Origin: Macrostomum lignano
Lineage: Eukaryota
Assembly (NCBI GenBank): GCA_002269645.1
Contig: NIVC01000951.1
Span: 1 to 30,526, forward strand
Length of the DNA stretch: 30,526 nt
Direction: 5' to 3'
Part shown: piece by piece, positions 4,964 to 30,526 of the stretch
How the letters are laid out: each line of letters opens with the position of its first letter
Numbering within the stretch: position 1 is the first letter of the stretch
Program-made: the position numbers and the translations under genes
The notes under the pieces: model-generated
What the model was told of the DNA's origin: nothing
The model's input: the letters and a program-made list of their open reading frames with translations, nothing else
The model's database searches: none

Positions 4964-6765
4964 ATGGAGGTCCCACATCCGGTGCAACTCACAACTCTGG
5001 TCGAGACCGAATCCGGGGCAGAGAGGTTTCGACTGAACCAAAACATCTGGGCGGAGATGCAGTCCGCTGACCGGCTCCAGAAGAGCAAGGTTGCTGTGAT
5101 CAGCGTTGCCGGAGCCTTTCGCAAGGGCAAGTCATTCCTGCTCAACTTTTTTCTTCGCTTCTTGAAGGCCGCGAGTTGCGGCGATGCTTCGCAGTGGCTT
5201 CGGTCCGACGAGAGGCTGTCAGATGGATTCCACTGGAGATCCGGGAGCGAGAGAGACACCACCGGGATCCTCATCTGGTCCGAGCCGTTCTTCATCCGCA
5301 AGCCCGACGGACAAGAGGTGGCCGTGCTACTGATGGACACTCAGGGAACATTCGATCACCAGTCCACTCAGCAGGACTGCACATCAATCTTTGCCTTCAG
5401 CACGCTGCTGAGCTCAGTGCAGATCTTCAACATCTCGCAGAACATCCAGGAGACAGATCTGCAGCACCTCCGACTATTTGTCGAGTTCGCATCGATCGCT
5501 TCGGACTCGCAGGACTCTGTGCTCCAGCATCTGTGGTTCCTCATCAGAGACTGGCAGTACCCTGATGAGTACGAGTTCGGTGTAGAAGGCGGACGCCAGT
5601 ACCTTGACAAGGTCCTGGAGTGCGATCCGAAAAAGCCAATGGAAAACTTGGAGCTTCGGCAGGGCATCCGAAAGTTTTTTGAAAACACGTCTTGCTGCCT
5701 TCTGCCACATCCCGGATTCGCTGTTACCAGAAAGGATTTTCACGGAGAGCTGGACAAAATCAGCCCGGAGTTTCTGGCGGAGATCGATAAACTTGCCGCT
5801 AGAATATTGTCACCTGAGTGCCTCGCTTCCAAGGCCGTCAACGGGAGAGCGCTGACGGGCTCCGAGCTGATAACCTTCGCCGAAGTCTATTACGAGGCTT
5901 TTCGCAGCGGAAGGCTTCCGTCATCGCGCACCATCCTGTCGGCCACCGTGGACTTGACGAACTTGGCCGTATCGAAGGCATCCAGAGAGTTGTTCGAACA
6001 GAAAGTGGCCTCACGAGTCGATTCAACAGCCGCGGTCACTGACGACGAATTCGAGAGCCTACTGGGTGCAGCGACTCTGGAAGCGCGGGCCTACTTTGAC
6101 AAGAACTGCATGCAGAAGAGCTCTGAAGCCACGGCTGACTGCCGGCGGGTCTTGAAGAAGACCTTCAGCAGCAGTCGCAACATCACCGACTCATGAACCA
6201 GCTGCGATCCGAAAAGATTGCCGAGGAGGAGAGAAACCAGATGCTCGCCAATGACATCGAGAGTCTGCACAAGGACAACGAGGAGGTTGCGAGACGAATG
6301 GTTGAGATGGAGCAGAGGTTCCAGCAGAGCATGAAAGAGCTTTCGCAGGGTATGGCATCAAGAGACGAATTCGAGAAAAGTTGCAGAAGGAGAGCATGCA
6401 GCACCAGATCAACCAGTGGAAAATGGAGCAGGAAAACCTGCAATTGACATCGAAACTTGCCGAGCTACAAAAGCAAGCCAGTGAAGCGATGGTGGAGGAG
6501 CAACGTAGGACCATGGAATCGAGACTGGAGCCATCGAGAAGGAAGACAGAAGAGAGAAAGACACCATGATGATTTGAAGTTGAGCACAGAGGAAATAAAA
6601 GAAGGCTACATCGCTGAGTACGAGCACTACGAAAGAACGGATGGAAGGCATCGAGCCCAGGCATCTGGGATCGCACGAGACAGAGAGAGACCAGATGCTC
6701 AAGAAAACCAAATAACAGAAGATTCTGAAGTCGGCAAGCTCGACAAGAGATGCAAACAGCAGTGA
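4964..6765 (+). CDS. Atlastin-like/GBP-like large GTPase, copy 1; frameshifted in the 3' coiled coil (pseudogene or assembly indels)
   Basis: G1 VAGAFRKGKS, G2 GSERDTTG, G3 MDTQG, LIRDW and LLPHPG lie in an open frame from ATG 4964 to about 6150. Homology to the paralogues continues in other frames (EEDLQQQ..MNQLRSEK, then LQKESMQHQ) after shifts near 6153, 6378 and 6520, with probably more beyond. The last open frame ends DKRCKQQ* at 6765. Confidence 0.85.
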
Positions 6766-7907
6766 GGCTGAGAGTTATTCTGCACAAACGTTCTTACGAT
6801 TTTTAACTAGTGCGTTAGTAAGTTGACTATTTTAAAACACTAACTTGTAGCCTTATGCTTACAGAGACAAAAATCAAGGACTTTCGCTTATCTAAATATA
6901 AGCCTATTACGAGAAACTGTTTCTTATTTTGCCTTAAATAAAAGTTTAGTCGCAGGAGGGTTGTGGTCAGAGCCTTCGTGTTACATTCTTGTTTTAGAAG
7001 TTTTCTTCTCAATTTTTTTGAGTACATTCTTCTTTCCGTGCAACAAAACAGTTTGCCGGACTTTCTCGGTTCCGGCGAAGCGAAACATTGTCAGGAATTC
7101 CAGCCTTGGGAAAAAAACTGGCTGATGCAGAAGATTTGATGCAGAAGAACTGCTTGGCTTCTAAACAGTGCACTTTAGCAGAAAAGGAACTTCGGTTCTC
7201 ATTAATGCAAATAATGAATGCACTGAATGCTCTCACAACGCCAATTATAAAAGTTGTTGGAATTTTACGGTAATATCTGTTGCTGGCGGTGCTGGGCTTT
7301 GGTGCATGCATTCAGGGAGGCGTTTTTGGCAACTGAAGTCCGTCATTTTTCCAGTTGTGTCAAAATTTGGCAAAATTCCTCTGTTTGGGTGCGCGGCTTG
7401 TCTGCAGGCCCCGGAGACAGCCTCTCTGTCTCTCTCAAGGGCCCAGTGTAGTACCATGCTGATGGACCTTTGGTTTGGCCTCTGGTTATTCCAATCCAGG
7501 ATCTTAGCCGAAGAGTTTCTCAGTTGCTAGCGGTCGTTCCAGTAAGAGCTTAAGCCACTCCTGGTCGCTATCTTTTGGCTTGCTGTTGGGTTTGGGGTTA
7601 CGGCCCAGCAGTCTCTTGCCTTAGCCCCCATTTGCCTTTCAGTGACCTATGAACACTGGCGCAACCGGATCTACCTGCACAACACCGCAGCACTAGCCGC
7701 CCGCTGTTGCCAGGGGTTAGCGGAATGGGCGTCAACGCCACATCGCTGTATCCGGATTCCCGGAGCCCCGGCAGCTGAGTAAATCTTAGCACATATCTAT
7801 CAAAATTGTTAGGGTGAGGAAGGGGATCAATTTAAATTTCCTTTCGTCCAAAACTTTAGTAAGCAGGGTCACGTGATACGACGTCTATTTCATATGATAT
7901 CTGAGTT

Positions 7908-8411
7908 GCAGAAAAGGAACTTCACTTTTAACCAGTGCACTTGCAGAGATCGAGCTTCACTTCTGATCAGTGGACTTGTAGAGATGGAACTTCCCTTTAA
8001 CCAGTGTACTTGCGGAGAGAGAACTTCACTTTTAACCAATGCACTTGCAGAAATGTAACTTCACTTTTAACCAGTGTACTTGCGGAGAGAGAACTTCCCT
8101 TTTAACCAGTGTACTTGCGGAGAGGGAACCTCACTTTTAACCAGTGTACTTGCGGAGAGAGAACTTCCCTTTTAACCAGTGTACTTGCGGAGAGAGAACT
8201 TCCCTTTTAACCAGTGTACTTGCGGAGATGGAACTTCCTTTTTAACCAGTGTACTTGCGGAGAGAGAACTTCCCTTTTAACCAGTGTACTTGCGGAGATG
8301 GAACTTCCTTTTTATCCAGTGTACTTGCGGAGAGAGAACTTCCCTTTTAATCAGTGTACTTGCGGAGAGGGAACTTCCCTTTTAACCAGTGTACTTGCGG
8401 TAAGGAAACTT
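7908..8411. repeat. 35-bp minisatellite, about 14 copies
   Basis: Unit TTTTAACCAGTGTACTTGCGGAGAGAGAACTTCCC. TTTAACCAGT recurs at 8101, 8136, 8171, 8206 and 8241. The leftmost units are more diverged. Confidence 0.95.
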
Positions 8412-8659
8412 CGATTCTACTTCGTAAACAGTACAGTAGAAAAAGGAAACTTCGCTTTTCAGAAGTTCACTAAGAGCTATAAAACAAGGAACGCAGTGCG
8501 CTCGAACACTTGAGTTTAAAGTTGCAGCCAGACCAAATCTATTAGCAGAAACTCTTCAAGGTATAAAGTAGCCTGTGACGGAAACAAGTTGTTAGTCCAG
8601 TGTACCAAGAGTCACGCCTGAGCTAAAGTTGTTTGAAGAAAAGCTTTTTAATATTTGCG

Positions 8660-10321
8660 ATGGCGAGCCCAACTGAAACCACTGCTACCGCAATACAACT
8701 CATCATTCCTGATGAGAAAAATACCGGATTTAGTTTGAATCCTAAGATCTCAGCACAGGTCAAAGACCTTGACCGAATGTTGAAAGCGAAGATCGCCATC
8801 ATCTGCGTGGCCGGAGCCTTCCGAAAAGGCAAGTCCTTCTTGCTCAACTTCTTTCTGCGCTACCTGACCGCCCTGGTAAGTGGAAACACAGAAGACTGGA
8901 TTAACTCGGATGACCATCATAGAAGCGGATTCCACTGGAAGTCCGGATCCAAGCGAGATACGACTGGAATTCTTCTCTGGTCGCAGCCGTTCTTCATCCG
9001 CAAGCCCGACGGACAAGAGGTGGCCGTGCTGCTGATGGACACTCAGGGCACGTTCGATCACCAGACGACTCAGCAGGACTGCACGACCATCTTTGCGTTC
9101 AGCACGCTGCTGAGCTCCGTGCAGATCTTCAACCTTTCGCAGAACATCTCCGAGGCGGATCTGCAGAATCTGCGCCTGTTCGTTGAGTTCGCGGCTTTGG
9201 CAAAGAGCTCAGAGGGAAAGGCTCTGCAGCATCTGTGGTTTCTGATCAGAGACTGGCAATTCCCAGATGAGCATCAGTATGGAGAAGAAGGTGGAAGCGA
9301 GTACTTGTCAACCGTTCTCGACTGTAGTGCTGACAGGCCACAAGAAAACAAAGAGCTACGAGAGGGAATCAAGAAGCACTTCGAGAAGGCTTCCTGCTAT
9401 CTGCTGCCTCATCCAGGCAAAGCAGTGAGAGACTCTAAATTCACGGGCGATGTCCAGAGACTAGAGACGGAGTTTGTTGAAGAAATCGAGAGCTTTGTTG
9501 AGAAGATCGCCGCTCCAGAGAACATCACAGTTAAGAAAGTCAACGGCAATGAGCTCTCTGGCAGCGAGCTCATCGACTTCATGGAGGTTTACTTTGAGGC
9601 TTTCAGCAGCGGCAGGATGCCAACTCCGTCGAGTGTTTTCTCCGCCACTGTCGAGATGGTCAACATGACCGCTGCTTCAAACTCAAAAAGACTGTTCGAA
9701 GACAAAGTCAAGAGCTTTTTGGATCCAGCGAAGAGTGACGAAGAGTTTCAAGCGGCAGTTGATGAAGCTTCAAAGGAGGCGCTGGATGCTTTCAACTCCA
9801 AGTGCATGGAGAGCGACTCGTCTGAAGTCCGGAAAGCGAAAAAGAAGCTCCAAGATGACCTAACCGAGCTGAAAGACAAGGCTGTCCTGAACAGGCAGCT
9901 CAGATCGGAGAAGCTAACGGCCGAGAAGAAGTCGGACTTGCTGAAGGGCGAGATGGAGGGCCTAAAGCAGCAGACTCAAGACCGGCAGAAGCAGATGCAG
10001 GAGATGGAAGCCACATTCAAGACAACAATCGAGCAGATCAAGTCGGAGAGCATTTCCAAAGAGGAGATGGAGAGGAAGCTGCAGGAAGAAGCGCTCAAAC
10101 AAGACGTTGCTCGAATAAAGATGGAGGAGAAGAATAACGAGCTAAGGAGGCAGATAAGTCAGATGCAAACCATGAGTGCTCAAAGTTCCGCTGCACAGAT
10201 TGAGCTTATAAACCTTAAGATCGAAAATGCGAGGCTGGAAGAGCGTGAAAGAATGAGGTGTGAGAGTATCCGCCACGAGGCGGCAGCAGCGCCACGAGGC
10301 GGTGGATGTTCAATCCAGTGA
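8660..10321 (+). CDS. Atlastin-like/GBP-like large GTPase, copy 2, intact, 553 aa, CaaX (CSIQ)
   Basis: Uninterrupted ORF with CVAGAFRKGKS, GSKRDTTG, MDTQG, LIRDW and LLPHPG, followed by a three-helix bundle and coiled coil with no TM segment. It ends GGGCSIQ*. ATG 8660 matches the paralogue N-terminal lengths better than the upstream TTG at 8633. Confidence 0.93.
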   Translation: MASPTETTATAIQLIIPDEKNTGFSLNPKISAQVKDLDRMLKAKIAIICVAGAFRKGKSFLLNFFLRYLTALVSGNTEDWINSDDHHRSGFHWKSGSKRDTTGILLWSQPFFIRKPDGQEVAVLLMDTQGTFDHQTTQQDCTTIFAFSTLLSSVQIFNLSQNISEADLQNLRLFVEFAALAKSSEGKALQHLWFLIRDWQFPDEHQYGEEGGSEYLSTVLDCSADRPQENKELREGIKKHFEKASCYLLPHPGKAVRDSKFTGDVQRLETEFVEEIESFVEKIAAPENITVKKVNGNELSGSELIDFMEVYFEAFSSGRMPTPSSVFSATVEMVNMTAASNSKRLFEDKVKSFLDPAKSDEEFQAAVDEASKEALDAFNSKCMESDSSEVRKAKKKLQDDLTELKDKAVLNRQLRSEKLTAEKKSDLLKGEMEGLKQQTQDRQKQMQEMEATFKTTIEQIKSESISKEEMERKLQEEALKQDVARIKMEEKNNELRRQISQMQTMSAQSSAAQIELINLKIENARLEERERMRCESIRHEAAAAPRGGGCSIQ

Positions 10322-10439
10322 TCATCGGCAGAATAAGGTGAATTTTTGTGGTTCTTATTTACCCAAAATAGTTCAGGCTCCAAACTTTTTCAGAGACTTG
10401 GGTTCTGTGTGGCTGTCTTTTTTCTGCTGAGAATAGTAT

Positions 10440-11840: not shown

Positions 11841-13588
11841 GTGCTGTGGTCTGTCTGTCCTGTATGGTACATTAATGGTGCTGTGGCTGTCTGGTCTGTC
11901 CTGTATTGTCCTTTAATGGTGCTGTGGCTGTCTGTTGGTCTGTTCTGTATTGTCCTTTAATGGTGCTGTGGCTGTCTGTTGGTCTGTTCTGTATTGTCCT
12001 TTAATGGTGCTGTGGCTGTCTGTTGGTCTGTTCTGTATTGTCCTTTAATGGTGCTGTGGCTGTCTGTTGGTCTGTTCTGTATTGTCCTTTAATGGTGCTG
12101 TGGCTGTCTGTTGGTCTGTTCTGTATTGTCCTTTAATGGTGCTGTGGCTGTCTGTTGGTCTGTTCTGTATTGTCCTTTAATGGTGCTGTGGCTGTCTGTT
12201 GGTCTGTTCTGTATTGTCCTTTAATGGTGCTGTGGCTGTCTGTTGGTCTGTTCTGTATTGTCCTTTAATGGTGCTGTGGCTGTCTGTTGGTCTGTTCTGT
12301 ATTGTCCTTTAATGGTGCTGTGGCTGTCTGTTGGTCTGTTCTGTATTGTCCTTTAATGGTGCTGTGGCTGTCTGTTGGTCTGTTCTGTATTGTCCTTTAA
12401 TGGTGCTGTGGCTGTCTGTTGGTCTGTTCTGTATTGTCCTTTAATGGTGCTGTGGCTGTCTGTTGGTCTGTTCTGTATTGTCCTTTAATGGTGCTGTGGC
12501 TGTCTGTTGGTCTGTTCTGTATTGTCCTTTAATGGTGCTGTGGCTGTCTGTTGGTCTGTTCTGTATTGTCCTTTAATGGTGCTGTGGCTGTCTGTTGGTC
12601 TGTTCTGTATTGTCCTTTAATGGTGCTGTGGCTGTCTGTTGGTCTGTTCTGTATTGTCCTTTAATGGTGCTGTGGCTGTCTGTTGGTCTGTTCTGTATTG
12701 TCCTTTAATGGTGCTGTGGCTGTCTGTTGGTCTGTTCTGTATTGTCCTTTAATGGTGCTGTGGCTGTCTGTTGGTCTGTTCTGTATTGTCCTTTAATGGT
12801 GCTGTGGCTGTCTGTTGGTCTGTTCTGTATTGTCCTTTAATGGTGCTGTGGCTGTCTGTTGGTCTGTCCTGTATTGTCCTTTAATGGTGCTGTGGCTGTC
12901 TGTTGGTCTGTTCTGTATTGTCCTTTAATGGTGCTGTGGCTGTCTGTTGGTCTGTTCTGTATTGTCCTTTAATGGTGCTGTGGCTGTCTGTTGGTCTGTT
13001 CTGTATTGTCCTTTAATGGTGCTGTGGCTGTCTGTTGGTCTGTTCTGTATTGTCCTTTAATGGTGCTGTGGCTGTCTGTTGGTCTGTTCTGTATTGTCCT
13101 TTAATGGTGCTGTGGCTGTCTGTTGGTCTGTTCTGTATTGTCCTTTAATGGTGCTGTGGCTGTCTGTTGGTCTGTCCTGTATTGTCCTTTAATGGTGCTG
13201 TGGCTGTCTGTTGGTCTGTTCTGTATTGTCCTTTAATGGTGCTGTGGCTGTCTGTTGGTCTGTTCTGTATTGTCCTTTAATGGTGCTGTGGCTGTCTGTT
13301 GGTCTGTTCTGTATTGTCCTTTAATGGTGCTGTGGCTGTCTGTTGGTCTGTCCTGTATTGTCCTTTAATGGTGCTGTGGCTGTCTGTTGGTCTGTTCTGT
13401 ATTGTCCTTTAATGGTGCTGTGGCTGTCTGTTGGTCTGTTCTGTATTGTCCTTTAATGGTGCTGTGGCTGTCTGTTGGTCTGTTCTGTATTGTCCTTTAA
13501 TGGTGCTGTGGCTGTCTGTTGGTCTGTTCTGTATTGTCCTTTAATGGTGCTGTGGCTGTCTGTTGGTCTGTTCTGTATTGTACATTAG
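11841..13588. repeat. 44-bp tandem array, about 40 copies, highly homogeneous
   Basis: Unit GGTGCTGTGGCTGTCTGTTGGTCTGTTCTGTATTGTCCTTTAAT. Lines 12001 and 12661 are identical and line 13321 keeps the same register (660 = 15 x 44). A T>C variant occurs near 12868, 13176 and 13352. The first two units are shorter. Confidence 0.98.
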
Positions 13589-14501: not shown

Positions 14502-16223
14502 CTAACTTTGAAACCAAAGACGCAAAGCTGTAGGAACGGCGGCGGACAAAATGGGAGAAACATACTTTGTGAAAAAGTTGGAAGAATCCTCTGCCGCCTT
14601 CCTGTATTTTTCCTGTGCAACCTTCATTTGCCGCATAAACTCCTCCATCATCTCCTGCTGCTGCTGCATCGCCTCCTCTTTATTCTGCTTCAGCTTACTC
14701 ATCAACTTCCGGTTTTTCTCCGCCATCTCCACGGTTCGCTTCATCATCTTTTCATTCTGCTTTTCCAATTCCTTTTGCGCAGTCGAGTGCTTAACCAGCA
14801 TCTCCTCCATTTGCTCTCTTGTAATCGCCGAGCGTTGAATCTCAGCAACTTTGTCAGCGAACTCCTTCTCCATCTCGCACATTCGTTGTGCAGCTGCCAG
14901 GCTCTCGTCCTGCATGCGCTTTATGTGGTCCATCAGCATGCGGCTCTTCGTCTCGGCCTCGATCTTGTCCGACTTCAGCTGGTTCAGCATCTGCTGCTGC
15001 TGGAACAGTCCTCGGAGCTCAGCTTCGAGCTTCATCCTGGTTTGAGCAGTGTCTTTCGATCCTCTCTCCATGCAGTTGTCATCGAAGTGCTGCATCGCCT
15101 GCTCAAACATCGTACTGAGTAGGTCGCTCAGCTCCTGGTCGCTGATGGCTGTCGGACCCGAAAGTGAGCCCATCGAATCTTCGAAGAATTTCACTGCGTC
15201 CCGCGAAGCAGATTGATTGGCCATCTCGACGGTGGCGGTGAAGATTCTCTTCGGAGTCGGCAGCTTGCCAAGGCGGAAGGCATCGAAGTAAACTTCAATA
15301 AGTGAGAAAAACTCTCGACCAGTGAGCACCTTGCCGTTCAGCTTCTTGACCACAAGATTTTCGGGCGCCAAAATACGGCGGACAAAGCAATCCAGGTGCT
15401 CGACAAAGTCGCTATCGAGCCTGTCAACTTGACCCTTGAAATCCGCTCGCGTGACTGCTTTTCCAGGATACGGCAGCAGGAAGCTGGACGCCGCCTCGAA
15501 CTGCCGCTTGATGCCTTGTCTCAGCGCCTGGTTCTCTGGAGGCTTCTTTTCATCACACGCAAGAACGTTTTTAAGGTAGTCTTCTCCGCCATTAGCTCCG
15601 TAATCATACTCGTCTGGATTCTGCCAGTCTCTGATGAGGAACCACAGATGTTGGAGAACTTTCTCTGCAGAGTTCTTCGCCATCGAAGCGAACTCAATAA
15701 ATAGTCGAAGGTGCTGCAGATCCGTCTCCTGGATGTTCTGCGAGATGTTGAAGATCTGAACTGAGCTCATCAGTGTGCTGAAGGCAAAGATGGTGGTGCA
15801 GTCCTGCTGGGTCGATTGGTGATCAAATGTGCCCTGAGTGTCCATGAGCAGCACGGCCACCTCTTGTCCGTCGGGCTTGCGGATGAAGAACGGCTCGGAC
15901 CAGATGAGGATCCCGGTGGTGTCTCTCTCGCTCCCGGCTCTCCAGTGGAATCCGTCGTCTAGCTGGTCCTCAGATAGAATCCAGTCACGAGTGTCACCTC
16001 GACTGAGAGCTCGGAGGTATCTCAGGAAGAAGTTGAGCAGAAAAGACTTGCCCTTGCGGAAGGCTCCAGCCACGCTGATGACGGCGACAGGCGATTTGGC
16101 AAGTCTTTCCGGTGAGTCAATGAGTTCAGCGAAGTCGCGGTTAAATTGAAATCGATCCTGTTCATCATCCCACTGCTGGCCTTCAACGACCGGCTTCGTC
16201 ACTTGGAGGGGTCTTCCTGGCAT
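14502..16223 (-). CDS. Atlastin-like/GBP-like large GTPase, copy 3, intact, about 573 aa, amphipathic/hydrophobic tail, no CaaX
   Basis: Uninterrupted ORF with the same G1-G3, RD and LLPYPG motifs. It ends SSNFFTKYVSPILSAAVPTALRLWFQS*. An upstream in-frame ATG exists at 16265, but ATG 16223 (MPGRPLQV) fits the paralogue N-termini and directly follows a splice-acceptor-like TATTTTCAG. Confidence 0.92.
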   Translation of the reverse strand: MPGRPLQVTKPVVEGQQWDDEQDRFQFNRDFAELIDSPERLAKSPVAVISVAGAFRKGKSFLLNFFLRYLRALSRGDTRDWILSEDQLDDGFHWRAGSERDTTGILIWSEPFFIRKPDGQEVAVLLMDTQGTFDHQSTQQDCTTIFAFSTLMSSVQIFNISQNIQETDLQHLRLFIEFASMAKNSAEKVLQHLWFLIRDWQNPDEYDYGANGGEDYLKNVLACDEKKPPENQALRQGIKRQFEAASSFLLPYPGKAVTRADFKGQVDRLDSDFVEHLDCFVRRILAPENLVVKKLNGKVLTGREFFSLIEVYFDAFRLGKLPTPKRIFTATVEMANQSASRDAVKFFEDSMGSLSGPTAISDQELSDLLSTMFEQAMQHFDDNCMERGSKDTAQTRMKLEAELRGLFQQQQMLNQLKSDKIEAETKSRMLMDHIKRMQDESLAAAQRMCEMEKEFADKVAEIQRSAITREQMEEMLVKHSTAQKELEKQNEKMMKRTVEMAEKNRKLMSKLKQNKEEAMQQQQEMMEEFMRQMKVAQEKYRKAAEDSSNFFTKYVSPILSAAVPTALRLWFQS

Positions 16224-17028
16224 TTCTGAAAATAGATTGCATAAGAATTTCGATCTTAGTCTCATCTGTCATAGCTCGCACAAAATATCTTGCAGTTGTG
16301 GTGTTATCGAATAGGAAATACTTTTCATCACCTTACGAGCTAGAATAGGAAAATTAAAGTACATTTCTGGAATCGTCGAATCAGCATGTGTCAGCTCCTT
16401 CGTAACTGTAATATACTCAGCAACATTTAAAAGTCGTCATCACAGAAGATTCAGTCTGTGGTCGCCACTTTTGAGAATGCAGGTAAAGTCTCTCAATCTT
16501 TGCCGCAACTTAGCTACACCGCGGCAGACTTGAGTTGAGGAATAAAGTGGGGGAGAGGTCGCGGGTTGGACGGATTAAAGCTACCCCGATCAGTTTTTTC
16601 GTATATTTGTTTTCAAAATAGTCCAAGAGAAATTGCTCACTGGCGCATAGAATGGCGACTTTTCAATGTTGCTGAGTGTATGTGTTTATTTTTCAGCACT
16701 TTTTCGCCACCACTTCTGACGTCAGGAACTGATTGTTGTTAATAACGAGTATGAATTCTTGCGATATATTTGTAGAATAGCCAAAGTTACTTAAACGAGT
16801 TATTGATAGTTAAATTAGCTATCTAACGTTGCAGTTACGCTAAAGTTAGTCTAACGAGTTAAAAATCGAGAGCAAAAGCTTGAATAATATTGAATTTCAC
16901 TGATGAACACTGGCAAAGTAAGTGGAGAGAGTACGAAATGGTAGAGACTTAAGGAGCGATGCAAGGCTAGCTGATGAGAGCATGAGAGCATGAGAGCATG
17001 ATGAAAAATCACGCTCACGTGTCATTAC

Positions 17029-18055: not shown

Positions 18056-18617
18056 CAAACAAACCCCGCACCGTTACCCAGCTCACAACCAACCAACCGT
18101 CACTTCAACAAGTCATACTATGGCTGCTATCGGAAAGAAGAGGACGCAATCATTCTGCCACAAGCAGAACAGGACAGGTCCATTTGTAGAGAGCCGTTAG
18201 TCATACCCTAATGCACTACTTAAAGTAACATCTAATAAAACCAATTTAAACTCGCAATCTGTTTTTAAATGAGTTATTATGAGTCATATCTATTTTTAAA
18301 ATATCTATTTTTAGAATGAGTCATGTGTAAACAGTAGTGACTCAGAACCCTACGTAGGACCAACGTTTATTTGCAAGGAACCGGTTCTCAGATGTTGTAT
18401 TTGCTTAATTCCATATACGGTAATAATCAAACATTCATGACCCCTTAATCAAACGCGCATGACATAAGCAAAAATCTGAGTAAAAAATCAGACTCGGAGC
18501 AGTCTCAAGACTGACTTTTGAAGACTTAAAAAAGAAGACCCATCTCTGAGGCACGAAATCCGGACCGATTGATAAGCGTTTCCAGATTTAGCTCTTTGCT
18601 ACTATAGCGCTAACAAG

Positions 18618-18806
18618 TTGATTAACAGTGGAACTACCAGGGGGGGAAATCTCCCTGACAATTTTTTTTGCTGCGCCGGAACGGAGCAACGCAGGCATAC
18701 GAAATTCAAGAACACGGGCTGACTTTTTGTTGCGCACCTTCTCAAACAAGAATCAAGTCGCCAGCTCTCCGGACCGTCGAGATATTCGACGATTCTGCCA
18801 GAAGGT
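18618..18806 (-). repeat. Inverted, truncated copy of segment B (TIR-like arm)
   Basis: Reverse complement of about 17829-18058 with a roughly 30-bp internal deletion. It joins the next 151-bp unit through the shared hexamer GAAGGT at 18801-18806. Confidence 0.88.
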
Positions 18807-19861
18807 GCCGACGGCGTCCGGGTGATGACTGAATGCTTGAGAGACTATCTGAGGCTGTCCCACGGTTTAGGCTTGCCCATTGTCAAGGCTTGATCAGTGA
18901 AACTCGAGAAATTCCTATCAGGCTACTCGTAGTCACCTGGTGTAATCTGTTGAAGGTGCTGACGGCGTCAGGGTGATGATGGAAGGCTTGAGAGACTAGC
19001 TGAGGATTTTTTAGAGGCAGTGGGGTTGGTGCACCCTGGCATAAGCGACTTTAAGCGACATAGGCACACAACCGGCGAGAGGCATTACTGCCCATTGCGC
19101 CGACTCCCCTGAGCACGCGGATACGTACGCAGGCACACACTCACACAGGAGTGTACAGCGGCCCTAACTTTATATTATCGTTAGGCATGTACACTTCACT
19201 GCGCCTTGGGGGTTGGCTCTCAAGGCCGTTAATTGCACGAACAGAGCCAAGCCGAGATTCCAATTCAGCCCCAAATTAATGTGACTGCACTTGGAATCGA
19301 GCCTGGGTCGCTGGCACACCAGAGCAGCTGCGCTACCGCTGGGCTACGGCCCCCCTTGACTAGCTGAGGATACCTAGCAGTTGAGGTTTGCCCACTGTCG
19401 AGGCTTGATCAGCGAAACTCGAGAAATTCGTATCAGGGTGTCCATAGTCACTTGGTGCCACTTGTTGAAGGTCCAGAAGCTCCGCTTGGGTGAAGGCCAG
19501 TGACCAACGAAGTCAGAGCTGATGCAGACACATGTGGTCGACGTGCTGATGAAATTTGGAGGCTTGGCAAGGCTGCACTGAGGTGCAGTGCTGATTGGCG
19601 CACAGGGGTGTACTGAATGCACTAGCGCTTAGGGGAAAAATCCGACCTTCTGGCAGAATCGTCGAACATCTCGACGGTCCGGATGGCTGGCGACTTGATT
19701 CTTGTTTGAGAAGGTGCGCAACAAAAAGTCAGCCCGTGTTCTTGAATTTCGTATGCCTGCGTTGCTACGTTCCGGCGCAGCAAAAAAAATTGTCAGGGGG
19801 ATTTTCCCCCCTCTTGGTAGTTCGACGGGCGGAAAAATGGCTTGGTATTCCTGCTGTTAAG
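18801..19861 (+). repeat. Direct duplication, copy A' (carries the SINE insertion)
   Basis: Two 151-bp units (18801-19472, interrupted by the SINE), the unique segment 19473-19602 and segment B (19603-19861) match copy A. Confidence 0.88.
19008..19357 (-). mobile_element. tRNA-derived SINE, 350 bp, full length
   Basis: Perfect 14-bp TSD GACTAGCTGAGGAT at 18994-19007 and 19358-19371. The empty site is visible in the sister copy near 17543. On the minus strand the 5' end reads GGGGCCGTAGCCCAGCGG (Pol III A box) and GGCTCGATTCC (B box, one mismatch), and the 3' end is a short A tail. Confidence 0.9.
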
Positions 19862-22389: not shown

Positions 22390-22392
22390 TAA

Positions 22393-22821
22393 TATTGGTT
22401 TTTGCGAGCTATCTCAGCCAAGGAGCAAGCAAACTCATCCATCCCATAGATTTCAATACGACGAAGGAGGTGGTTTGAACCATGACTATCACGTTTTTTC
22501 AACCAAACTCATCCAACGGGCGAGCATTCTCAGCCATAGCTTGTCTGCCCATTCATTTCCTCTTCCCTTCTTTCTTTCCTCCTCCTCCGATGGCTCAGTT
22601 GTGTTCTGATGTGCTGCTCTATCATAAAGTCTCTTATATACGAACCAATTAAATTTTTCGCTTAATAAACAAGCTATGGCTGAGATAGCTCGCCCGTTGG
22701 ATGAGTTTGGTTGAAAAAACGTGATAGTCTATGGTTCAAACAACCTCCTTCATCGTATTGAAATCTATGGGATGGATGACTTTGCTTGCTCCTTGGCTGA
22801 GATAGCTCGCAAAAACCAATA
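22393..22821. mobile_element. Foldback/MITE-like element: about 152-bp near-perfect inverted arms with a 124-bp spacer
   Basis: 22393-22544 is the reverse complement of 22669-22821 with only a few mismatches or indels. Each arm repeats GCGAGC..CTCAGCCA and CAAACTCATCCA twice. No clear TSD. Confidence 0.85.
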
Positions 22822-24589: not shown

Positions 24590-26260
24590 CTACATCAAGG
24601 GGCACGATCTTTTTGGTTTTCTCGACTCGAGCTGGGAAATCCGACTTTGCAGTTCGGCCACCTCACTCTGCCTCAACTGTTCTCGCCTTTCAAAGGAGCG
24701 CTGAGCCTCTTGCTGGCGAACAGAGAGCTGGTTTTTCAATTGTGAATTCATTTCCGCGAGTTGGTTCACTTTTCCCACAAGCTTCTCGCTATCAGCCTGA
24801 ATTTTCATCTTGTCAGCAAGGTGCTGCATTGACAAGTCTTGCAGCAAGCGATCCATTTCATCCTTTGAGACGCTTTGCCTCCTGATTTCTTCCTCAGTTC
24901 TCCTAAAGTTCTCCTCCATGTTTTCCATCTGTTGCAATACGTCCATGTTCTGTAGCTGCAGTCTCCCGATTTCGTGCTGCAATTGTTGGTTTTTTCTGTC
25001 GGCGCTCAAAGTCCTCGACTGCAGCCTCCTGACGAACTTCTTGTTATCAAGCAGCCCTTGGATCTCCTCTTTCAGCTTCTCCAGAGTCTTCTTGGTAGCC
25101 GCGGTTTCTGGCTGCATGCAGTTGGAAAGAAAATATTCCAGTGACTGTTGCTTCAGGACTTCTAGAATGTCGAAAAACTCGTCATCATGGAGGTCCGGAT
25201 CCAGAGAGTCTTCAAACATCTGCCTCGCCCCCTGAGCAGCGGTGATGTTTGCCATCTCAACTGTTGCATCGAAAATGTTTCTTGGAGTAGGCATTTTCCC
25301 GTTTTTAAAGGCTTCGAAATATATGTCAAAAAACTTGAATAGCTCTTTTCCAGGAAGTTCGGTTCCGTTCACCTTTTTTACTACCAGCGCTTGTGGACTG
25401 GCAATGACTGGAATGAACTTCTCCATTTCATCCACGAACTCGGGATCCAGTCGATGTATTTCACCTCGGAAGTCTTTGGCTGCAACTGCCTTTCCTGGAT
25501 GCGGCAGCAAGCAGCAGGATGCGCGCTCGAAGTACCGCTTGATGCCCAGCCTGAGCTCCTGGTTCTCCTTCGGCTTACGGCTATCGCACGCAAGGACTTT
25601 GTCCAGGTATTCCTGTCCACCAGTAGAACCATAGTCATGCTCGTGCGAATTCTGCCAGTCTCTGGTGAGGAACCACAGATGCTGAAGAACTTTCTTATCC
25701 TTCGACTCTCTCGCCATTGAAGCAAACTCGACAAACAGTCGGAGGTGCTGCAGATCTGTTTCCTGGATGTTCTGCGAGATGTTGAAAATTTGCACCGAAC
25801 TCAGAAGTGTGCTGAATCCAAAGATCGTAGCGCAGTCTCTTTGAGTCGACTGGTGATCGAATGCGCCCTGAGTGTCCATCAGCAGCACGGCCACCTCTTG
25901 TCCATCGGGCTTGCGGATGAAGAACGGCTCGGACCAGATGAGGATCCCGGTGGTGTCTCTCTCGCTCCCGGCTCTCCAGTGGAATCCGTCATCGAGCTGG
26001 TCCTCAGATCGAATCCAGTCTCGAGTGTCACCTCGACTGAGAGCTCGGAGGTATCTCAGGAAGAAGTTGAGCAGGAAAGACTTGCCCTTGCGGAAGGCTC
26101 CGGCCACGCTAATGAGAACCACCTTGCAGGTCGCCAGCTTGTGAGCGTTTCGCATTTGCTTGAAGATATCAGCGTTGAACTCGAATCGCATGCAGTCATC
26201 TTCTGTGTCTTCAGCTAGCTGGACGAGGTGGATCGGTCCGCTCCGTACTGATGAAGCCAT
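24590..26260 (-). CDS. Atlastin-like/GBP-like large GTPase, copy 4, intact, 556 aa, polybasic + CaaX (RKPKRSCPLM)
   Basis: Uninterrupted ORF from ATG 26260 with VAGAFRKGKS, GSERDTTG, MDTQG, LTRDW and LLPHPG, a coiled coil and no TM segment. Confidence 0.93.
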   Translation of the reverse strand: MASSVRSGPIHLVQLAEDTEDDCMRFEFNADIFKQMRNAHKLATCKVVLISVAGAFRKGKSFLLNFFLRYLRALSRGDTRDWIRSEDQLDDGFHWRAGSERDTTGILIWSEPFFIRKPDGQEVAVLLMDTQGAFDHQSTQRDCATIFGFSTLLSSVQIFNISQNIQETDLQHLRLFVEFASMARESKDKKVLQHLWFLTRDWQNSHEHDYGSTGGQEYLDKVLACDSRKPKENQELRLGIKRYFERASCCLLPHPGKAVAAKDFRGEIHRLDPEFVDEMEKFIPVIASPQALVVKKVNGTELPGKELFKFFDIYFEAFKNGKMPTPRNIFDATVEMANITAAQGARQMFEDSLDPDLHDDEFFDILEVLKQQSLEYFLSNCMQPETAATKKTLEKLKEEIQGLLDNKKFVRRLQSRTLSADRKNQQLQHEIGRLQLQNMDVLQQMENMEENFRRTEEEIRRQSVSKDEMDRLLQDLSMQHLADKMKIQADSEKLVGKVNQLAEMNSQLKNQLSVRQQEAQRSFERREQLRQSEVAELQSRISQLESRKPKRSCPLM

Positions 26261-27176: not shown

Positions 27177-29057
27177 ATGACGACTGGCGAGGTTGTCTAC
27201 CTGGCAGAGCTAGCAAGCGGTGAGTCTGAGAGCGTCGAGAGATTCAAACTGAACGCTGGCATCGAGCGTCGAATTCTTTCATCTAAGAGCTTCCTTCGGT
27301 CTAAAGTCGCTGTAGTCAGTGTTGCCGGGGCATTTCTTAAAGGCAAGTCCTTCCTGCTCAACTTCTTCCTGAGATACCTCAGAGCTCTCAGTCGAGGAGA
27401 CACTCGAGACTGGATTCGATCTGATGACCAGCTCGATGACGAATTCCACTGGAGAGCCGGGATCGAGAGAGACACCACCGGCATCCTCATCTGGTCCGAG
27501 CCGTTCTTCATCCGCAAGCCCGACGGAGAAGCGGTGGCCGTGCTGCTGATGGACACTCAGGGTACATTCGATCACCAGTCGACTCAGCAGGAATAGCACC
27601 TCAATCTTCGTCTTCAGCACACTACTGAGCTCAGTGCAGATCTTCAACATCTCGCAGAACATTCAAGAGACGGATCTGCAGCACCTCCGACTGTTCGTTG
27701 AGTTCGCCTCGATGGCAAAGGATGAAAGCGAAAAGGTCCTTCAAGACTTGTGGTTTCTACGAGTCGTAATTCGGGACTGGCAAAACCCCGATGAGTTCGA
27801 GAACGGCCATGCCGGCGGTATGAGATATCTACGCAAGGTAGTGGCGTCAGATGAGAACATGCCGGCTGAAAACCGTGAGCTCCGCACAGGCATCAGGAAA
27901 TATTTCGCATGTTTTGCTGCCTGCTGCCCAGCCCTGGGAAGTGTGCGACTAGATCGAATGTTCGAGGGGAGCTGGACAAGCTAGATGAAGACTTCGTTGA
28001 GGAGGTTGAGAAGTTTGTGGAACTCGTGCTATCACCTGAAAAGCTTGTCATTAAAGCAGTTAATGGAAGAGAACTCACTGGGCATGAGCTGCTGAACTTC
28101 GCTAAAGTCTACTTTGAGGCCTTCCGCAGCGGCAGGCTGCCTTCGCCCAAGTCGCTGTTCTCGGCCACCGTCGAATTGACGAACGCTGCGGTTGCCGCAT
28201 CCGCCAGACAGACGTTTGTTGACAAGGCCAGGCCGATTTCAGCCTCCGCATCCGCTGTTGACGCAATCGAATTAGAGCCACAGCTGCAGAAATTGGCCGA
28301 CGAATCGCTCGAACAATTCGACAAGCGCTGCATGCAGAAGGACTCAACCGACTGCGACAAGTGCCGACGAAAACTGCACGACAATCTACAGAGGGAGGTG
28401 CAGGATTTGATACTAATGAACCAGCTGAAGTCTGACAAGATCGCTGAGCAGAAGAAAGGATAGTTGCTGCAGCAAGATTTTCAGCGTGTCCTTGATGAGA
28501 AAGTTGATACCAACAGAAGGATGCAGCAACTGGAGCAGGAATTCCAGGAAAAAGTGAAACGAATCTTGGAGTCGTCCGTGTCCAAGGAGGAGATGCGGTC
28601 GCTGCTAGAAAAAGAGTCCATGCAACGCCAATTGGCCCTGCAGGAGTCCGAGGCGCGCAGCTCGCGGCAGGCAGCCAAGATAGAATCCCTGCTAAAGATG
28701 AACGAGGAGCTGCAGCGCCAGGTGCGCGAAAGCCAAGAGGAACGCAGGCAGCAGGATGCCAACGCAAAGCAGATGATGGCGCAGTGGGAGAAGCACATGG
28801 AAGAAGAGCGCAGGCGTCGGGAGCAGGAGGCCAAACGCAGTGCTAAGTGGGAGAATTTTCTTTTCGGAGTTTTGCAGGCTGCTGGGGGTGAAATTGTTAA
28901 ATGAACGATTTCGATTTTTTTCAGCGGCAGCGAGACAAGAGGCGCCAGTTCTTCCTCTGCCGCAGCCGCGGCTTCAACCCCAACCTTCATCCCGTTTCCC
29001 ATGTTCAGCCCCACCAGCTTCGCAGAAGCAGGAAAATCCAAAAGGAAAGGAAGCTGA
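27177..29057 (+). pseudogene. Atlastin-like/GBP-like large GTPase, copy 5, pseudogene
   Basis: G1 reads GAFLKGKS (R>L at 27336-27338). A +1 insertion creates TAG at 27594-27596. There is a 3-codon insertion before IRDW, a frameshift near 27905-27912, and an in-frame TAG at 28461-28463. The TGA at 28902-28904 is followed by 50 more open codons ending GKSKRKGS* at 29057, so the original end is either 28904 or 29057. Confidence 0.88.
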
Positions 29058-30285
29058 TGGGAAATAGCTGATCAAAATTGTGTTTTACTTTACAATATGT
29101 TTGATGTAATCATAATTGACTATATTTGTTATTTATTCACCGCATATTTTGCCTTTTTTGAATTTCTGTAGACATTCTGGTTCAAACAAATGTTTATTTG
29201 AAAGCGGTACGAGCTACATCATTGATTTTAGGAACGAGCGTACTATCAAAACAGGGTTCCATCCAGAATTATCCTACTATTCAAGATTTTGGAATATTCT
29301 GTCAGTTTCTGACATAAATTTCCTGTTTAGCCTCGTGATCTTCAGAAATTTTAAATACACAAATATATTTAAACTCAGATAAATTAATTAATTTTATTAT
29401 ATTGAATGTCTGCCAAGCTACTCCGGTATCAGGCTTCCCCGCCTCCCCACCAACGCTCTGCGCCTTCACTGCAACTGTGCTTTAAATACAGCATTCTCAA
29501 TGTTCTTAATATTCATTCTTGCGTTATGCTATGGCAGGCAGAAATCAGATCCCCAAATTCCTTGAAAAACCCTAAGAATTCTTGCGTAAAAGCCTGCTCA
29601 GAGAGCCTGCTCGTGAGGAGTGGTAGCCGCCTCCGAGGCATTTACAGCGGCCCGGAGGGCACCAAAACCACCTTAGCAGCCGGAGAGGTTCGCAAAGAGC
29701 CTTGCGCTCAGGCATAAAAAATTATACCTTAAAAATCCTTCACAATTAGGGCACTCTTACGAGATGAAAAGAGTGGATAATACAAGTGCAGGGATTGAGA
29801 TAGCCTTTTACCCATTCAGATATCAATAAGTTCGGTTATTCATATCGCCATGAGCTCAAAATATTAAAAGCTCGAAGCTTGTCAAGCATCTCCCTAGTTG
29901 TGAATGACAAGCAATTGTCTTTCCGACGATGTGGAACTTCGAGCTTATGAAACGACCGCCTTATTTGATTCCCTTTGGGTTAGAGAATGCTGAAGCGAGT
30001 GACAAAGCCAAATCAAAGCTAAAATAGACATAAGCGTAACGCGTTTGTCTTGCAATTTTATTTTATCACGCATCAGGAAAATGATGCAATCCAATTATCA
30101 GTGTACACAGGTCCTGTTTTAGATGCTCTTTAGGGTCACAAATCTTGGAGGAAATTCGAATACTGGTACAGCTATTCGATAAAACCATTTGTTGATCTAC
30201 TTTTGTATAACAGAATTTCATGAAAAACTGTCATTACAACAGCAGAATGGGAAAAATTCTTCTGTAGTCAGGGCAGCCTCAGCTG

Positions 30286-30526
30286 TCACATCAGCACACA
30301 ATTGCCTTTATTGAAGCTATCTTGTATCTCGTTCAGCTTTTGGGCACTCTGTCTACTGTTGGCCTCTTCATTTTTCAGCGCGAACATCACTGCTTCCAAG
30401 TTTCTTTGGATCTCCGAAATTTCTCTGTTAGCGTTTCTACGCTCCTCGTTTCGTTCTCTGTCGAGCTTTTCCTTCTCATTCCGAAGACTGCTGACCTCGC
30501 GTTCAAGCCGCTGCACAGCACTGTTG
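30286..30526 (-). CDS. 3' end of a coiled-coil protein ending in CaaX (GNCVLM); probable copy 6 of the GTPase family, truncated by the window edge
   Basis: The frame is open from the window end to the stop at 30286. It is an E/R/K/N-rich coiled coil ending in CVLM*. Family membership is inferred from architecture and position only. Confidence 0.6.
   Translation of the reverse strand, partial: NSAVQRLEREVSSLRNEKEKLDRERNEERRNANREISEIQRNLEAVMFALKNEEANSRQSAQKLNEIQDSFNKGNCVLM

What the first reader, a model, noticed from the sequence alone, without database searches (positions are those of the whole stretch)
4964..30526. Expanded cluster of atlastin-derived GTPases rebuilt into a GBP-like soluble, prenylated form
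Seen: five full-length paralogues with intronless CDS and a probable sixth, oriented + + - - + -, within 26 kb. Their G-domain motifs are atlastin-type (VAGAFRKGKSFLL, GSERDTTG, KPDG..VAVLLMDTQG, IFNxSQNIxExDLQxLxLF, LxRDW, LLPxPG) and similarity runs through the three-helix bundle. Where atlastin enters its TM hairpin (the NQLRSEK/NQLKSDK junction), all copies instead continue into 130-190 aa of coiled coil that share a motif like S(V/I)S(K/R)(E/D)EM..L. Established: atlastins are ER fusogens anchored by a TM hairpin, while GBPs are coiled-coil, often CaaX-prenylated GTPases that coat pathogen membranes and occur in fast-evolving clusters. Inference: one atlastin copy lost its TM hairpin, converged on the GBP architecture and amplified, possibly as a lineage-specific cell-autonomous immunity family.
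Basis: partly seen in the sequence, partly recalled or inferred. Interest (0 to 1): 0.85.

Follow-up and report, generated by a model that had tools for sequence, protein, structure and literature searches.

The report
Flatworm cluster of anchor-swapped atlastin GTPases
A flatworm (Macrostomum lignano) carries six neighbouring copies of an atlastin-type GTPase in which the usual membrane-spanning hairpin is replaced by a long helical hairpin, mostly ending in a lipid-attachment (CaaX) signal; a transmembrane-less relative in silkworm is antiviral, but the flatworm genes' function is untested.

Summary
The window is a whole contig of the Macrostomum lignano genome. It holds six atlastin-type GTPase genes in the order + + - - + -.

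- **State of the copies:** three are intact single-exon ORFs (c2, c3, c4). c1 has three small frame-breaking deletions in simple repeats and is intact on a sister contig. c5 is a real pseudogene. c6 is cut by the contig end and is full-length on the sister contig.
- **Family assignment:** sequence and predicted fold are closest to atlastin (PDB 1e-88; Foldseek 2e-34). RNF112 (1e-38) and GBPs (1e-11) are much further.
- **Tail and anchor:** no copy has a transmembrane hairpin, and none is encoded anywhere in the window. Instead, the last three-helix-bundle (3HB) helix continues into a two-helix hairpin of 142-190 residues. Four of six copies end in CaaX (CKQQ, CSIQ, CPLM, CVLM).
- **Age and selection:** the paralogues are old. 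Synonymous sites are saturated outside a roughly 300-nt gene-conversion tract over the nucleotide-binding core, and the G domain is under purifying selection.
- **Not unique:** the architecture is not unique. TM-less atlastin paralogues are published for silkworm, where BmAtlastin-n is antiviral. I found CaaX-ended or tail-anchored forms in mites, ticks, barnacles, insects, Daphnia and nematodes, in separate clades.
- **Open:** an immune role in the flatworm is plausible but untested.

The parts
4964..6765 (+). Paralogue c1. It has an atlastin-type G domain, a 3HB, a helical tail and a C-terminal CKQQ. In this window the frame is broken by deletions near 6143, 6375 and 6554.
   Evidence: The intact 601-aa ORF is at L001:5302-7107. 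CKQQ is the prenylated CaaX of NAP1L1/NAP1L4 (PMC7902609).
8660..10321 (+). Paralogue c2, an intact 553-aa protein (the ORF is open from TTG 8633). P-loop at 8813-8836, junction RQLRSEK at 9893-9913, hairpin-turn motif SISKEEM at 10049-10069, CaaX CSIQ at 10307-10318.
   Evidence: The protein is identical on two sister contigs.
14502..16265 (-). Paralogue c3, an intact 587-aa protein (annotated as 573 aa). It has no CaaX and ends in a short hydrophobic or amphipathic segment, NFFTKYVSPILSAAVPTALRLWFQS.
24590..26260 (-). Paralogue c4, an intact 556-aa protein with CaaX CPLM (CVLM on the sister contig).
27177..28904 (+). Paralogue c5, a pseudogene. Frameshifts lie near 27590 and 27925. There is a 9-bp insertion at 27758-27766 and an in-frame TAG at 28461-28463. 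P-loop R is changed to L (GAFLKGKS). No CaaX.
   Evidence: The first frameshift is shared with L004 and is not in a homopolymer.
30286..30526 (-). Paralogue c6. Only the last 79 codons of the helical tail are present, because the contig ends here. It ends in CaaX CVLM.
   Evidence: The full-length copy is at L004:10001-11788.
15677..16088 (-). Gene-conversion tract over the nucleotide-binding core (P-loop to switch II) of c3. The matching tracts are c4 25711-26125 and c5 27303-27592.
   Evidence: Nucleotide identity is 89-90% over about 290 nt (D16, I4, I5). Third-position identity is 85-100% at residues about 43-135, against 20-60% beyond residue 250.

Best explanation
This is a six-gene tandem family in Macrostomum lignano: four or five functional genes and one pseudogene. 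The genes derive from atlastin and keep its GTPase domain and three-helix bundle. The double-pass membrane hairpin and the C-terminal amphipathic helix are gone. In their place is a long two-helix hairpin (about 75 + 75 residues), with a conserved S-x-S-K-E-E-M motif at the turn. The C terminus carries a CaaX prenylation signal in c1, c2, c4 and c6, or a short hydrophobic tail in c3.

Likely mechanism (inferred): the proteins are soluble or peripheral. They attach to membranes through a farnesyl or geranylgeranyl group. Like atlastin, they dimerise through the G domains on GTP binding, using the cis arginine of GAFRKGKS. This would let them tether or coat membranes rather than fuse the ER.

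The role I consider most likely, though only weakly supported, is defence or organelle surveillance of the kind shown for silkworm BmAtlastin-n and for vertebrate GBPs.

Shown: ancestry, domain layout, absence of a TM segment, the CaaX ends, the age of the family, purifying selection and gene conversion. Inferred: prenylation, GTP-driven assembly on membranes and the biological role.
For: - **Ancestry:** atlastin is the closest family by sequence and by fold. Catalytic and nucleotide-binding residues are invariant across paralogues and canonical atlastins: G52, R55, G57, K58, S59, T101, T102, D127-G130, R197-W199, P250-G253.
- **No TM segment:** shown by hydropathy. No hidden hairpin-coding exon exists in 30.5 kb.
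- **Tail structure:** AlphaFold2 models of two paralogues agree. c2 (pLDDT 86.6) has helices 388-462 and 467-543. c3 (pLDDT 82.8) has helices 404-478 and 484-575. In both, the break falls on the conserved motif. Heptad a/d contrast exceeds shuffles with z = 2.5-4.3.
- **CaaX:** four of six copies carry it, and it is kept, with variation, on the sister contig (CPLM/CVLM, CVLM/CVMM). Cys at -4 occurs in 28 of 93 TM-less homologues against 1 of 161 TM-bearing ones.
- **Selection:** G-domain dN/dS is 0.17-0.33, and dS is saturated elsewhere.
- **Precedent:** BmAtlastin-n is TM-less, cytoplasmic, midgut-enriched and restricts BmNPV (PMC4926086).
Against: - No expression, localisation or biochemical data exist for the flatworm genes, and supplement searches found nothing.
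- No Logan-derived copy of c2 or c4 is on record; all places found are genome contigs. This is weak evidence, because the collection's coverage of M. lignano RNA-seq is unknown.
- Flatworms have no interferon system (established knowledge).
- Positive selection cannot be tested on saturated paralogues.
- CKQQ and CPLM are non-canonical CaaX boxes.
- c3 lacks CaaX.
- I could not establish whether M. lignano also keeps a canonical TM atlastin.
Confidence: 0.6

Rival explanations
1. The family has a housekeeping or tissue-specific membrane-dynamics role, not immunity. As prenyl-anchored atlastin paralogues they would tether particular organelles, for example in the germline, sperm or gland cells, which are rich in lineage-specific genes in Macrostomum.
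For: - The G domain is under strong purifying selection and is further homogenised by gene conversion.
- The paralogues are old and stably retained.
- Tail-anchored and CaaX forms are widespread in arthropods and nematodes with no known immune link.
- The 3HB needed for the atlastin crossover is kept.
Against: - The only functionally studied TM-less atlastin is antiviral and antiparasitic (PMC4926086; PMC9005921).
- Tandem multi-copy clusters with divergent tails are more typical of defence families.
- In the mite, the parallel cluster lies beside three serpin genes.
Confidence: 0.3
2. The array is a decaying set of retro-copies or pseudogenes with no function.
For: - c5 is a pseudogene, and c1 is frame-broken in this window.
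- The CDSs have no introns, whereas M. lignano genes average about 4.9 introns (PMC5730564).
- No transcript-derived copy was found.
Against: - Three ORFs of 553-587 codons are intact although synonymous sites are saturated.
- G-domain dN/dS is about 0.2.
- The catalytic residues are invariant.
- CaaX is retained in four copies and on the sister contigs.
- The c1 indels lie in homopolymer or dinucleotide runs of a PacBio-based assembly, and c1 is intact on L001.
Confidence: 0.05
3. They are ordinary atlastins whose TM hairpin is supplied by an unrecognised downstream exon, or they are mis-assigned canonical GBPs.
For: Pfam names the domain 'GBP' (PF02263), with a weak GBP_C hit. Public gene models in this region are chimeric and unreliable.
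Against: - The ORFs run uninterrupted to stop codons placed directly after CaaX.
- tblastn with seven atlastin TM and tail regions gives nothing below E = 0.1.
- No stop-free double hydrophobic segment exists in any frame of the window.
- Atlastin outranks GBP by about 77 orders of magnitude in sequence E-value and 16 in fold E-value.
Confidence: 0.03

Closest known systems
BmAtlastin-n and Bombyx mori Atlastin3/4 (TM-less atlastin paralogues; Liu et al. 2016, PMC4926086)
   Same: They share an atlastin-type G domain, a helical continuation and no TM segments. They are extra paralogues alongside other atlastin genes. BmAtlastin-n is cytoplasmic and restricts baculovirus and microsporidia. c2 is 39% identical to the Bombyx TM-less protein P0159 over the G domain and 3HB.
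   Different: - The clades are separate in the NJ tree.
- The tails are not homologous. The silkworm tail is about 350 aa and seems to be built from repeated 3HB-like segments. The flatworm tail is a 142-190-aa two-helix hairpin.
- P0159 and its Operophtera relatives have no CaaX.
- A six-gene tandem array and CaaX ends are not described for silkworm.
Canonical atlastins (ATL1-3, Drosophila Atl)
   Same: The G domain is 33-39% identical and shares the catalytic motifs, including the cis arginine of GAFRKGKS. The three-helix bundle is shared, and the predicted fold has TM-score 0.81-0.86 to ATL1/ATL3 crystal structures.
   Different: The flatworm proteins have no TM hairpin and no C-terminal amphipathic helix after it. 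Both are required for atlastin-mediated fusion (established knowledge). They therefore fail that defining feature.
Guanylate-binding proteins (GBP1/2/5)
   Same: The overall layout is the same: a large GTPase, a helical middle part, long paired helices and a C-terminal CaaX. Both form multi-copy gene clusters and belong to the same GBP/atlastin branch of the dynamin superfamily.
   Different: The G domain is far from GBPs (E = 1e-11 against 1e-88 for atlastin). The middle domain is the atlastin 3HB, not GBP helices alpha7-11. The resemblance is therefore parallel evolution, not membership.
Uncharacterised 'atlastin-like' proteins with CaaX or a tail anchor in arthropods and nematodes
   Same: They show the same swap of the hairpin for a helical extension plus a C-terminal anchor:
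- mite Halotydeus destructor: CSIL, CTLL
- barnacle Amphibalanus amphitrite: CTIL, CVIM
- Zophobas morio: CTIS
- Contarinia nasturtii: CQIL
- Amblyomma ticks: CTLM, CLLF
- Planococcus citri: CGLM
- Daphnia carinata: CILN
- tephritid flies: 800-aa tail-anchored forms
- TM-less forms in the nematodes Pristionchus entomophagus, Diploscapter pachys and Mesorhabditis spiculigera

The mite has four such genes within 11 kb.
   Different: The M. lignano clade is monophyletic (95% bootstrap) and never groups with the mite clade (0 of 200 replicates). The tails do not align. These proteins have only automatic database names, and I found no paper on them.

Membership tests
Atlastin (canonical ER fusogen) | Atlastin-type GTPase domain with GxxRxGKS, DTQG and RD motifs | tested here: met
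   PDB phmmer gives 2.6e-88 to Drosophila atlastin. The motif columns are invariant.
Atlastin (canonical ER fusogen) | Three-helix-bundle middle domain | tested here: met
   AlphaFold2 predicts helices 301-315, 323-352, 360-381 and 388 onward in c2. Foldseek TM-score to ATL1 1-446 is 0.81-0.86.
Atlastin (canonical ER fusogen) | Two closely spaced TM segments (hairpin) after the 3HB | tested here: not met
   Maximum 19-aa Kyte-Doolittle value is 1.34-1.41, against 1.9-2.8 in canonical atlastins. The alignment shows the hairpin columns are absent. No such coding piece exists in the window.
Atlastin (canonical ER fusogen) | C-terminal amphipathic helix after the hairpin, and ER fusion activity | not testable with these tools
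   No homologous segment aligns. c3 has an unrelated hydrophobic or amphipathic end (muH 0.43). Fusion activity needs biochemistry.
GBP (guanylate-binding proteins) | GBP-type large GTPase domain closer to GBPs than to other dynamin-superfamily branches | tested here: not met
   GBP5 scores 1.3e-11 and GBP1 8e-11, against 1e-88 for atlastin. Foldseek gives 3e-18 against 2e-34.
GBP (guanylate-binding proteins) | C-terminal helical domain (Pfam GBP_C) | tested here: inconclusive
   PF02841 scores 16-24 bits, below the 24.3 cut-off, and covers only the 3HB region.
GBP (guanylate-binding proteins) | CaaX box and pathogen- or cytokine-induced expression | not testable with these tools
   The CaaX motif is present in four of six copies. 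No expression data were found.
TM-less atlastin paralogues of the BmAtlastin-n type | Atlastin-type G domain, helical or coiled-coil continuation, no TM segment | tested here: met
   The definition is taken from PMC4926086.
TM-less atlastin paralogues of the BmAtlastin-n type | Orthology with the lepidopteran genes | tested here: not met
   The clades are separate in the NJ tree. There is no tail similarity to Bombyx P0159. NJ only, so long-branch effects are possible.
CaaX-prenylated proteins | Cysteine at the fourth position from the C terminus in a context accepted by FTase or GGTase-I | tested here: met
   - c1 has CKQQ, the same as prenylated NAP1L1/NAP1L4 (PMC7902609).
- c2 has CSIQ.
- c4 has CPLM, and CVLM on the sister contig.
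- c6 has CVLM, and CVMM on the sister contig.
- c3 and c5 do not meet the feature.
CaaX-prenylated proteins | Actual isoprenylation of the cysteine | not testable with these tools
   This needs metabolic labelling or mass spectrometry.
RNF112/ZNF179 | N-terminal RING finger plus a GBP/atlastin-like G domain and TM segments | tested here: not met
   Pfam finds only PF02263 and PF02841. The RNF112 structure 9jju matches at 6.8e-38, much weaker than atlastin.

The most novel reading that the evidence does not exclude
Atlastin has repeatedly been rebuilt into a GBP-like effector: lipid-anchored, helical-tailed and self-assembling. This would have happened independently in a flatworm and in many arthropod and nematode lineages, producing tandem families that fill the cell-autonomous defence niche GBPs hold in vertebrates. 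The M. lignano cluster would be the first such family in a transgenic, RNAi-tractable invertebrate. A still more unusual reading is not excluded: M. lignano may have no canonical TM atlastin at all, and these prenylated forms may shape its ER. I put that at about 0.05.
Probability: 0.3. Interest if true: 0.8.

Novelty: new variant of a known kind. Interest (0 to 1): 0.55.

Why it matters
A 2022 review of GBPs asks whether atlastins took over defence functions in invertebrates that lack GBPs (PMC9005921). So far only the silkworm's BmAtlastin-n speaks to this.

The flatworm cluster, together with the CaaX-ended and tail-anchored relatives found here in mites, ticks, barnacles, insects, Daphnia and nematodes, shows that swapping atlastin's membrane hairpin for a lipid or tail anchor is recurrent. 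It has not been described as a class in the literature I could search.

M. lignano has transgenesis and RNAi. Localisation, prenylation and infection phenotypes are therefore directly testable there. The family also offers a natural experiment on what an atlastin G domain plus 3HB does when it cannot span the bilayer.

Tried and rejected
1. **Hidden TM exon.** tblastn with seven atlastin TM and tail regions, and a six-frame scan for double hydrophobic segments, found nothing.
2. **Canonical GBP or RNF112 identity.** Rejected on sequence and fold E-values.
3. **Orthology with the mite CaaX cluster.** Rejected: 0 of 200 bootstraps.
4. **dN/dS for positive selection among paralogues.** Synonymous sites are saturated in the 3HB and tail, and a conversion tract distorts the G domain, so no test was possible.
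5. **Profile search with the 3HB plus tail (A2).** It returned only 11 proteins, because word-based candidate selection was swamped.
6. **Expression look-up.** I searched for Mlig034242, Mlig014101, Mlig022258 and 'atlastin' in the supplements of four M. lignano papers. No occurrence.
7. **Canonical TM atlastin of M. lignano.** Not found among the named hits, and the tools cannot search by taxon. This stays unresolved.
8. **Literature search for prenylated or TM-less atlastins.** Apart from BmAtlastin-n and the review PMC9005921 that discusses it, the searches returned nothing on TM-less or prenylated atlastins.
9. **Placement of the M. lignano clade.** It sits at the base of all atlastins (51% bootstrap) or beside a Bursaphelenchus atlastin. 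I treat both placements as probable long-branch artefacts of NJ.


Full report
**What the window is**

The best protein matches are 100% identical Macrostomum lignano entries. The look-up of encoding contigs shows that the window is the whole 30,526-bp contig NIVC01000951.1 of assembly GCA_002269645.1 (Mlig_3_7). Two further contigs carry nearly the same cluster: NIVC01003765.1 (77.8 kb; loci L001 and L004) and NIVC01003048.1 (L003). They differ from the window by about 1-2%. This fits the published redundancy of the assembly, which is a Pilon-polished PacBio/Canu assembly with 180 Mb in duplicated blocks of at least 95% identity (PMC5730564).

**Checking the observation**

ORF listing and tblastn give five copies.

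| Copy | Coordinates | State | C terminus |
|---|---|---|---|
| c1 | 4964-6765 (+) | Frame-broken in this window | CKQQ |
| c2 | 8660-10321 (+) | Intact, 553 aa | CSIQ |
| c3 | 14502-16265 (-) | Intact, 587 aa | LRLWFQS (no CaaX) |
| c4 | 24590-26260 (-) | Intact, 556 aa | CPLM |
| c5 | 27177-28904 (+) | Pseudogene | No CaaX |
| c6 | 30286-30526 (-) | Last 79 codons only | CVLM |

- **The sixth copy is real.** The minus strand at 30286-30526 is open to the contig end and reads ...NEIQDSFNKGNCVLM*. On the sister contig the same gene is complete (L004:10001-11788, 595 aa, ending CVMM).
- **c1 is frame-broken.** It differs from the intact 601-aa ORF on L001 by a 1-bp deletion in a G run, a 1-bp deletion in an A5 run and a 2-bp deletion in a GA repeat. 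L003 carries a different 1-bp deletion. These are either assembly indel errors or very young lesions.
- **c5 is a real pseudogene.** Its first frameshift is shared with L004 and is not in a homopolymer. The window copy also has a 9-bp insertion, a P-loop Arg-to-Leu change and an in-frame TAG.

The quoted motifs, the orientation and the span are correct. The statement 'five full-length intronless CDS' is only partly correct.

**What the proteins are**

- Pfam finds the GBP/atlastin N-terminal GTPase domain (1e-63 to 2e-66) and a sub-threshold GBP_C hit over the 3HB.
- Against PDB sequences the order is Drosophila atlastin 2.6e-88, human ATL1 4e-85, ATL3 3e-82, then RNF112 (9jju; PMC12012479) 6.8e-38, then GBP5 and GBP1 at about 1e-11.
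- An AlphaFold2 model of c2 (pLDDT 86.6) gives the same order by Foldseek: ATL1 2e-34 with TM-score 0.81-0.86, RNF112 1e-21, GBP1 3e-18.
- In an alignment with canonical atlastins from a brachiopod, a sponge, a frog and amphioxus, similarity runs through the third 3HB helix to the N(E/Q)xK junction. There the canonical proteins enter the TM hairpin. The flatworm proteins have no counterpart to it.
- Hydropathy agrees. The maximum 19-residue Kyte-Doolittle mean is 1.34-1.41 in the flatworm proteins, against 1.9-2.8 at residues about 420-500 in canonical atlastins.
- No atlastin-like TM or tail coding sequence, and no stop-free double hydrophobic stretch, exists in any frame of the window.

**The tail**

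The tails are 142-190 aa long, rich in E, K, Q and R, and almost free of Pro and Gly. Their heptad a/d hydrophobic contrast exceeds shuffled controls (z = 2.5-4.3).

AlphaFold2 models of two paralogues agree. The last 3HB helix continues for about 75 residues (c2 388-462; c3 404-478). A short break follows, then a second long helix (c2 467-543; c3 484-575) and a disordered end that carries the CaaX. The break coincides with the only conserved tail motif: SISKEEM at c2 464-470 and AITREQM at c3 480-486. I therefore read the motif as the hairpin turn and helix N-cap.

**CaaX**

- Four of six copies end in Cys-x-x-x. The sister-contig copies keep the cysteine while the a and X positions vary (CPLM/CVLM, CVLM/CVMM).
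- CKQQ is the CaaX of NAP1L1 and NAP1L4, which are recovered as prenylated proteins (PMC7902609).
- Among 291 homologues collected here, Cys at -4 occurs in 1 of 161 proteins with a TM region and in 28 of 93 without. The latter set includes some redundant sequences.
- c3 instead ends in a short hydrophobic or amphipathic segment.

**Age and mode of evolution**

- Nei-Gojobori estimates between paralogues show saturated synonymous sites in the 3HB and tail (pS 0.6-0.95). In the G domain, dN/dS is 0.17-0.33.
- Within the G domain there is a tract of about 290 nt, from the P-loop to switch II. It is 89-90% identical in DNA between c3, c4 and c5.
- In that tract, third-position identity at conserved codons is 85-100% among c3, c4 and c6. 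Beyond residue 250 it is 20-60%.
- This is gene conversion that homogenises the catalytic core while the tails diverge.
- The family is therefore old and constrained, not demonstrably fast-evolving.
- The CDSs are single exons. M. lignano genes average about 4.9 introns, which hints at a retro-copy origin. That is inference only.

**Relatives elsewhere**

An exhaustive HMM search of 1.84 billion representatives found no close relative outside M. lignano. The next hits are ordinary or atypical atlastins at 270-390 bits per G domain; the higher-scoring hits carry more than one G domain. In M. lignano the only additional member seen is another near-identical copy of c6 on a 615-kb contig.

Many hits lack the hairpin:
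- **Mite (Halotydeus destructor):** four atlastin-like genes lie within 11 kb next to three serpin genes. Two of them end in CSIL and CTLL.
- **Other CaaX-ended forms:** barnacle (CTIL, CVIM), Zophobas (CTIS), Contarinia (CQIL), Amblyomma ticks (CTLM, CLLF), Planococcus (CGLM) and Daphnia carinata (CILN).
- **Tail-anchored forms:** 800-aa proteins in tephritid flies.
- **TM-less forms in nematodes:** Pristionchus, Diploscapter and Mesorhabditis.

Neighbour-joining trees on 382-391 G-domain and 3HB columns give these results:
- The flatworm copies are monophyletic (95% bootstrap).
- The mite trio is monophyletic (98.5%).
- The two never group together (0 of 200 replicates).
- On the larger tree there are 44 maximal non-TM clades. 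This number is inflated by fragments and by NJ error.
- The deep position of the flatworm clade is unresolved and probably affected by long branches.

**Literature**

Liu et al. 2016 describe BmAtlastin-n of Bombyx mori. It is 770 aa, with an atlastin-type GTPase domain, a coiled-coil region and no TM segments. It is cytoplasmic, midgut-enriched and restricts BmNPV. They note that silkworm Atlastin3 and Atlastin4 also lack TM segments (PMC4926086).

A 2022 review adds protection against microsporidia. It asks whether atlastins adopted GBP-like defence roles in invertebrates without GBPs (PMC9005921).

A Bombyx TM-less atlastin (P0159) is among my hits. It is 39% identical to c2 over the G domain and 3HB only. 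I found no paper on CaaX-ended atlastin relatives, and none on M. lignano atlastins.

**Interpretation**

- The proteins derive from atlastin.
- The hairpin is lost.
- The tail is a helical hairpin.
- Most copies carry a prenylation signal.
- The copies are amplified in tandem.

The proposed mechanism is a prenyl-anchored, GTP-dimerising tether or coat. It follows from conserved catalytic residues and from what is known of atlastin and GBP mechanisms, but it is inferred. The immune role is a reasonable hypothesis with one published precedent and no direct evidence here. A tissue-specific membrane-dynamics role is the main rival.

The finding is a new variant of a known kind, namely TM-less atlastin paralogues. 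Its added value is showing that anchor swapping is recurrent across protostomes.

Noticed in passing
window 11853-13581: A satellite of 39 copies of a 44-bp unit at 99% identity lies between c2 and c3. It accounts for the strong AT and GC skew in this region.
   Followed up: partly
window 7916-8412: A minisatellite of 14 copies of a 35-bp unit lies about 250 bp upstream of the c2 start codon.
   Followed up: no
window 17019-19812 and 22393-22821: The 8-kb spacer between c3 and c4 holds a 151-bp tandem repeat (four copies), near-perfect inverted repeats (17830-17983, 18653-18806, 19645-19812) and a 91-nt inverted repeat pair. These are probably transposon remnants. No ORF there has a Pfam hit.
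   Followed up: partly
window about 600-3800 (+): An unrelated multi-exon gene lies upstream of the cluster. The ORF piece at 1812-2138 matches Pfam Beta-lactamase (PF00144, 2.4e-09). At the other end of the cluster, on the sister contig, lies a gene called with a 2968-aa product. One of its ORFs has a weak, sub-threshold Pfam Cadherin hit (L004:1-6892).
   Followed up: partly
whole window; L001, L003, L004: The window is a complete contig. The same cluster is present on at least two other contigs at about 98-99% identity, and c2 is identical at the protein level on all three. Lesions differ between the copies: the c1 indels and the c5 TAG.
   Followed up: yes
public proteins P0001, P0002, P0004, P0126, P0286: Database gene models for this locus are chimeras that fuse neighbouring paralogues: c1+c2; the c6 N terminus with the c4 C terminus; and multi-copy fusions of 940-1419 aa. 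The conversion tract probably misleads gene predictors.
   Followed up: partly
L006 (Halotydeus destructor JAIUWE010000095.1: 21453-43110): The mite has four atlastin-like genes (508, 519, 606 and 624 aa) within 11 kb, interrupted by an FMO-like gene. Three serpin genes and ATG9 flank them. This is an independent parallel to the flatworm cluster.
   Followed up: partly
P0111, P0190 (ticks), P0122 (Daphnia carinata), P0206 (Planococcus citri): Short forms of 419-445 aa stop right after the 3HB junction and end in CaaX-like boxes (CLLF, CTLM, CILN, CGLM). They could be alternative isoforms of atlastin genes that swap the hairpin for a lipid anchor.
   Followed up: no
c3 C terminus (window 14505-14580, minus strand) compared with barnacle P0196: The c3 end NFFTKYVSPILSAAVPTA resembles the barnacle pre-CaaX segment NFFTSVLNALMPTLVSLA. 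c5 on the sister contig has NFLFGVLQAAGG...NFFSG. This may be a shared amphipathic membrane-binding element, or it may be chance.
   Followed up: no
P0159 (Bombyx), P0139 (Diploscapter), P0166 (barnacle): The long tails of these TM-less atlastin-likes seem to be made of repeated 3HB-like segments. BLASTP gives weak secondary hits of c2 residues 355-408 to Bombyx 521-547 and 589-659. The flatworm two-helix hairpin is different.
   Followed up: no
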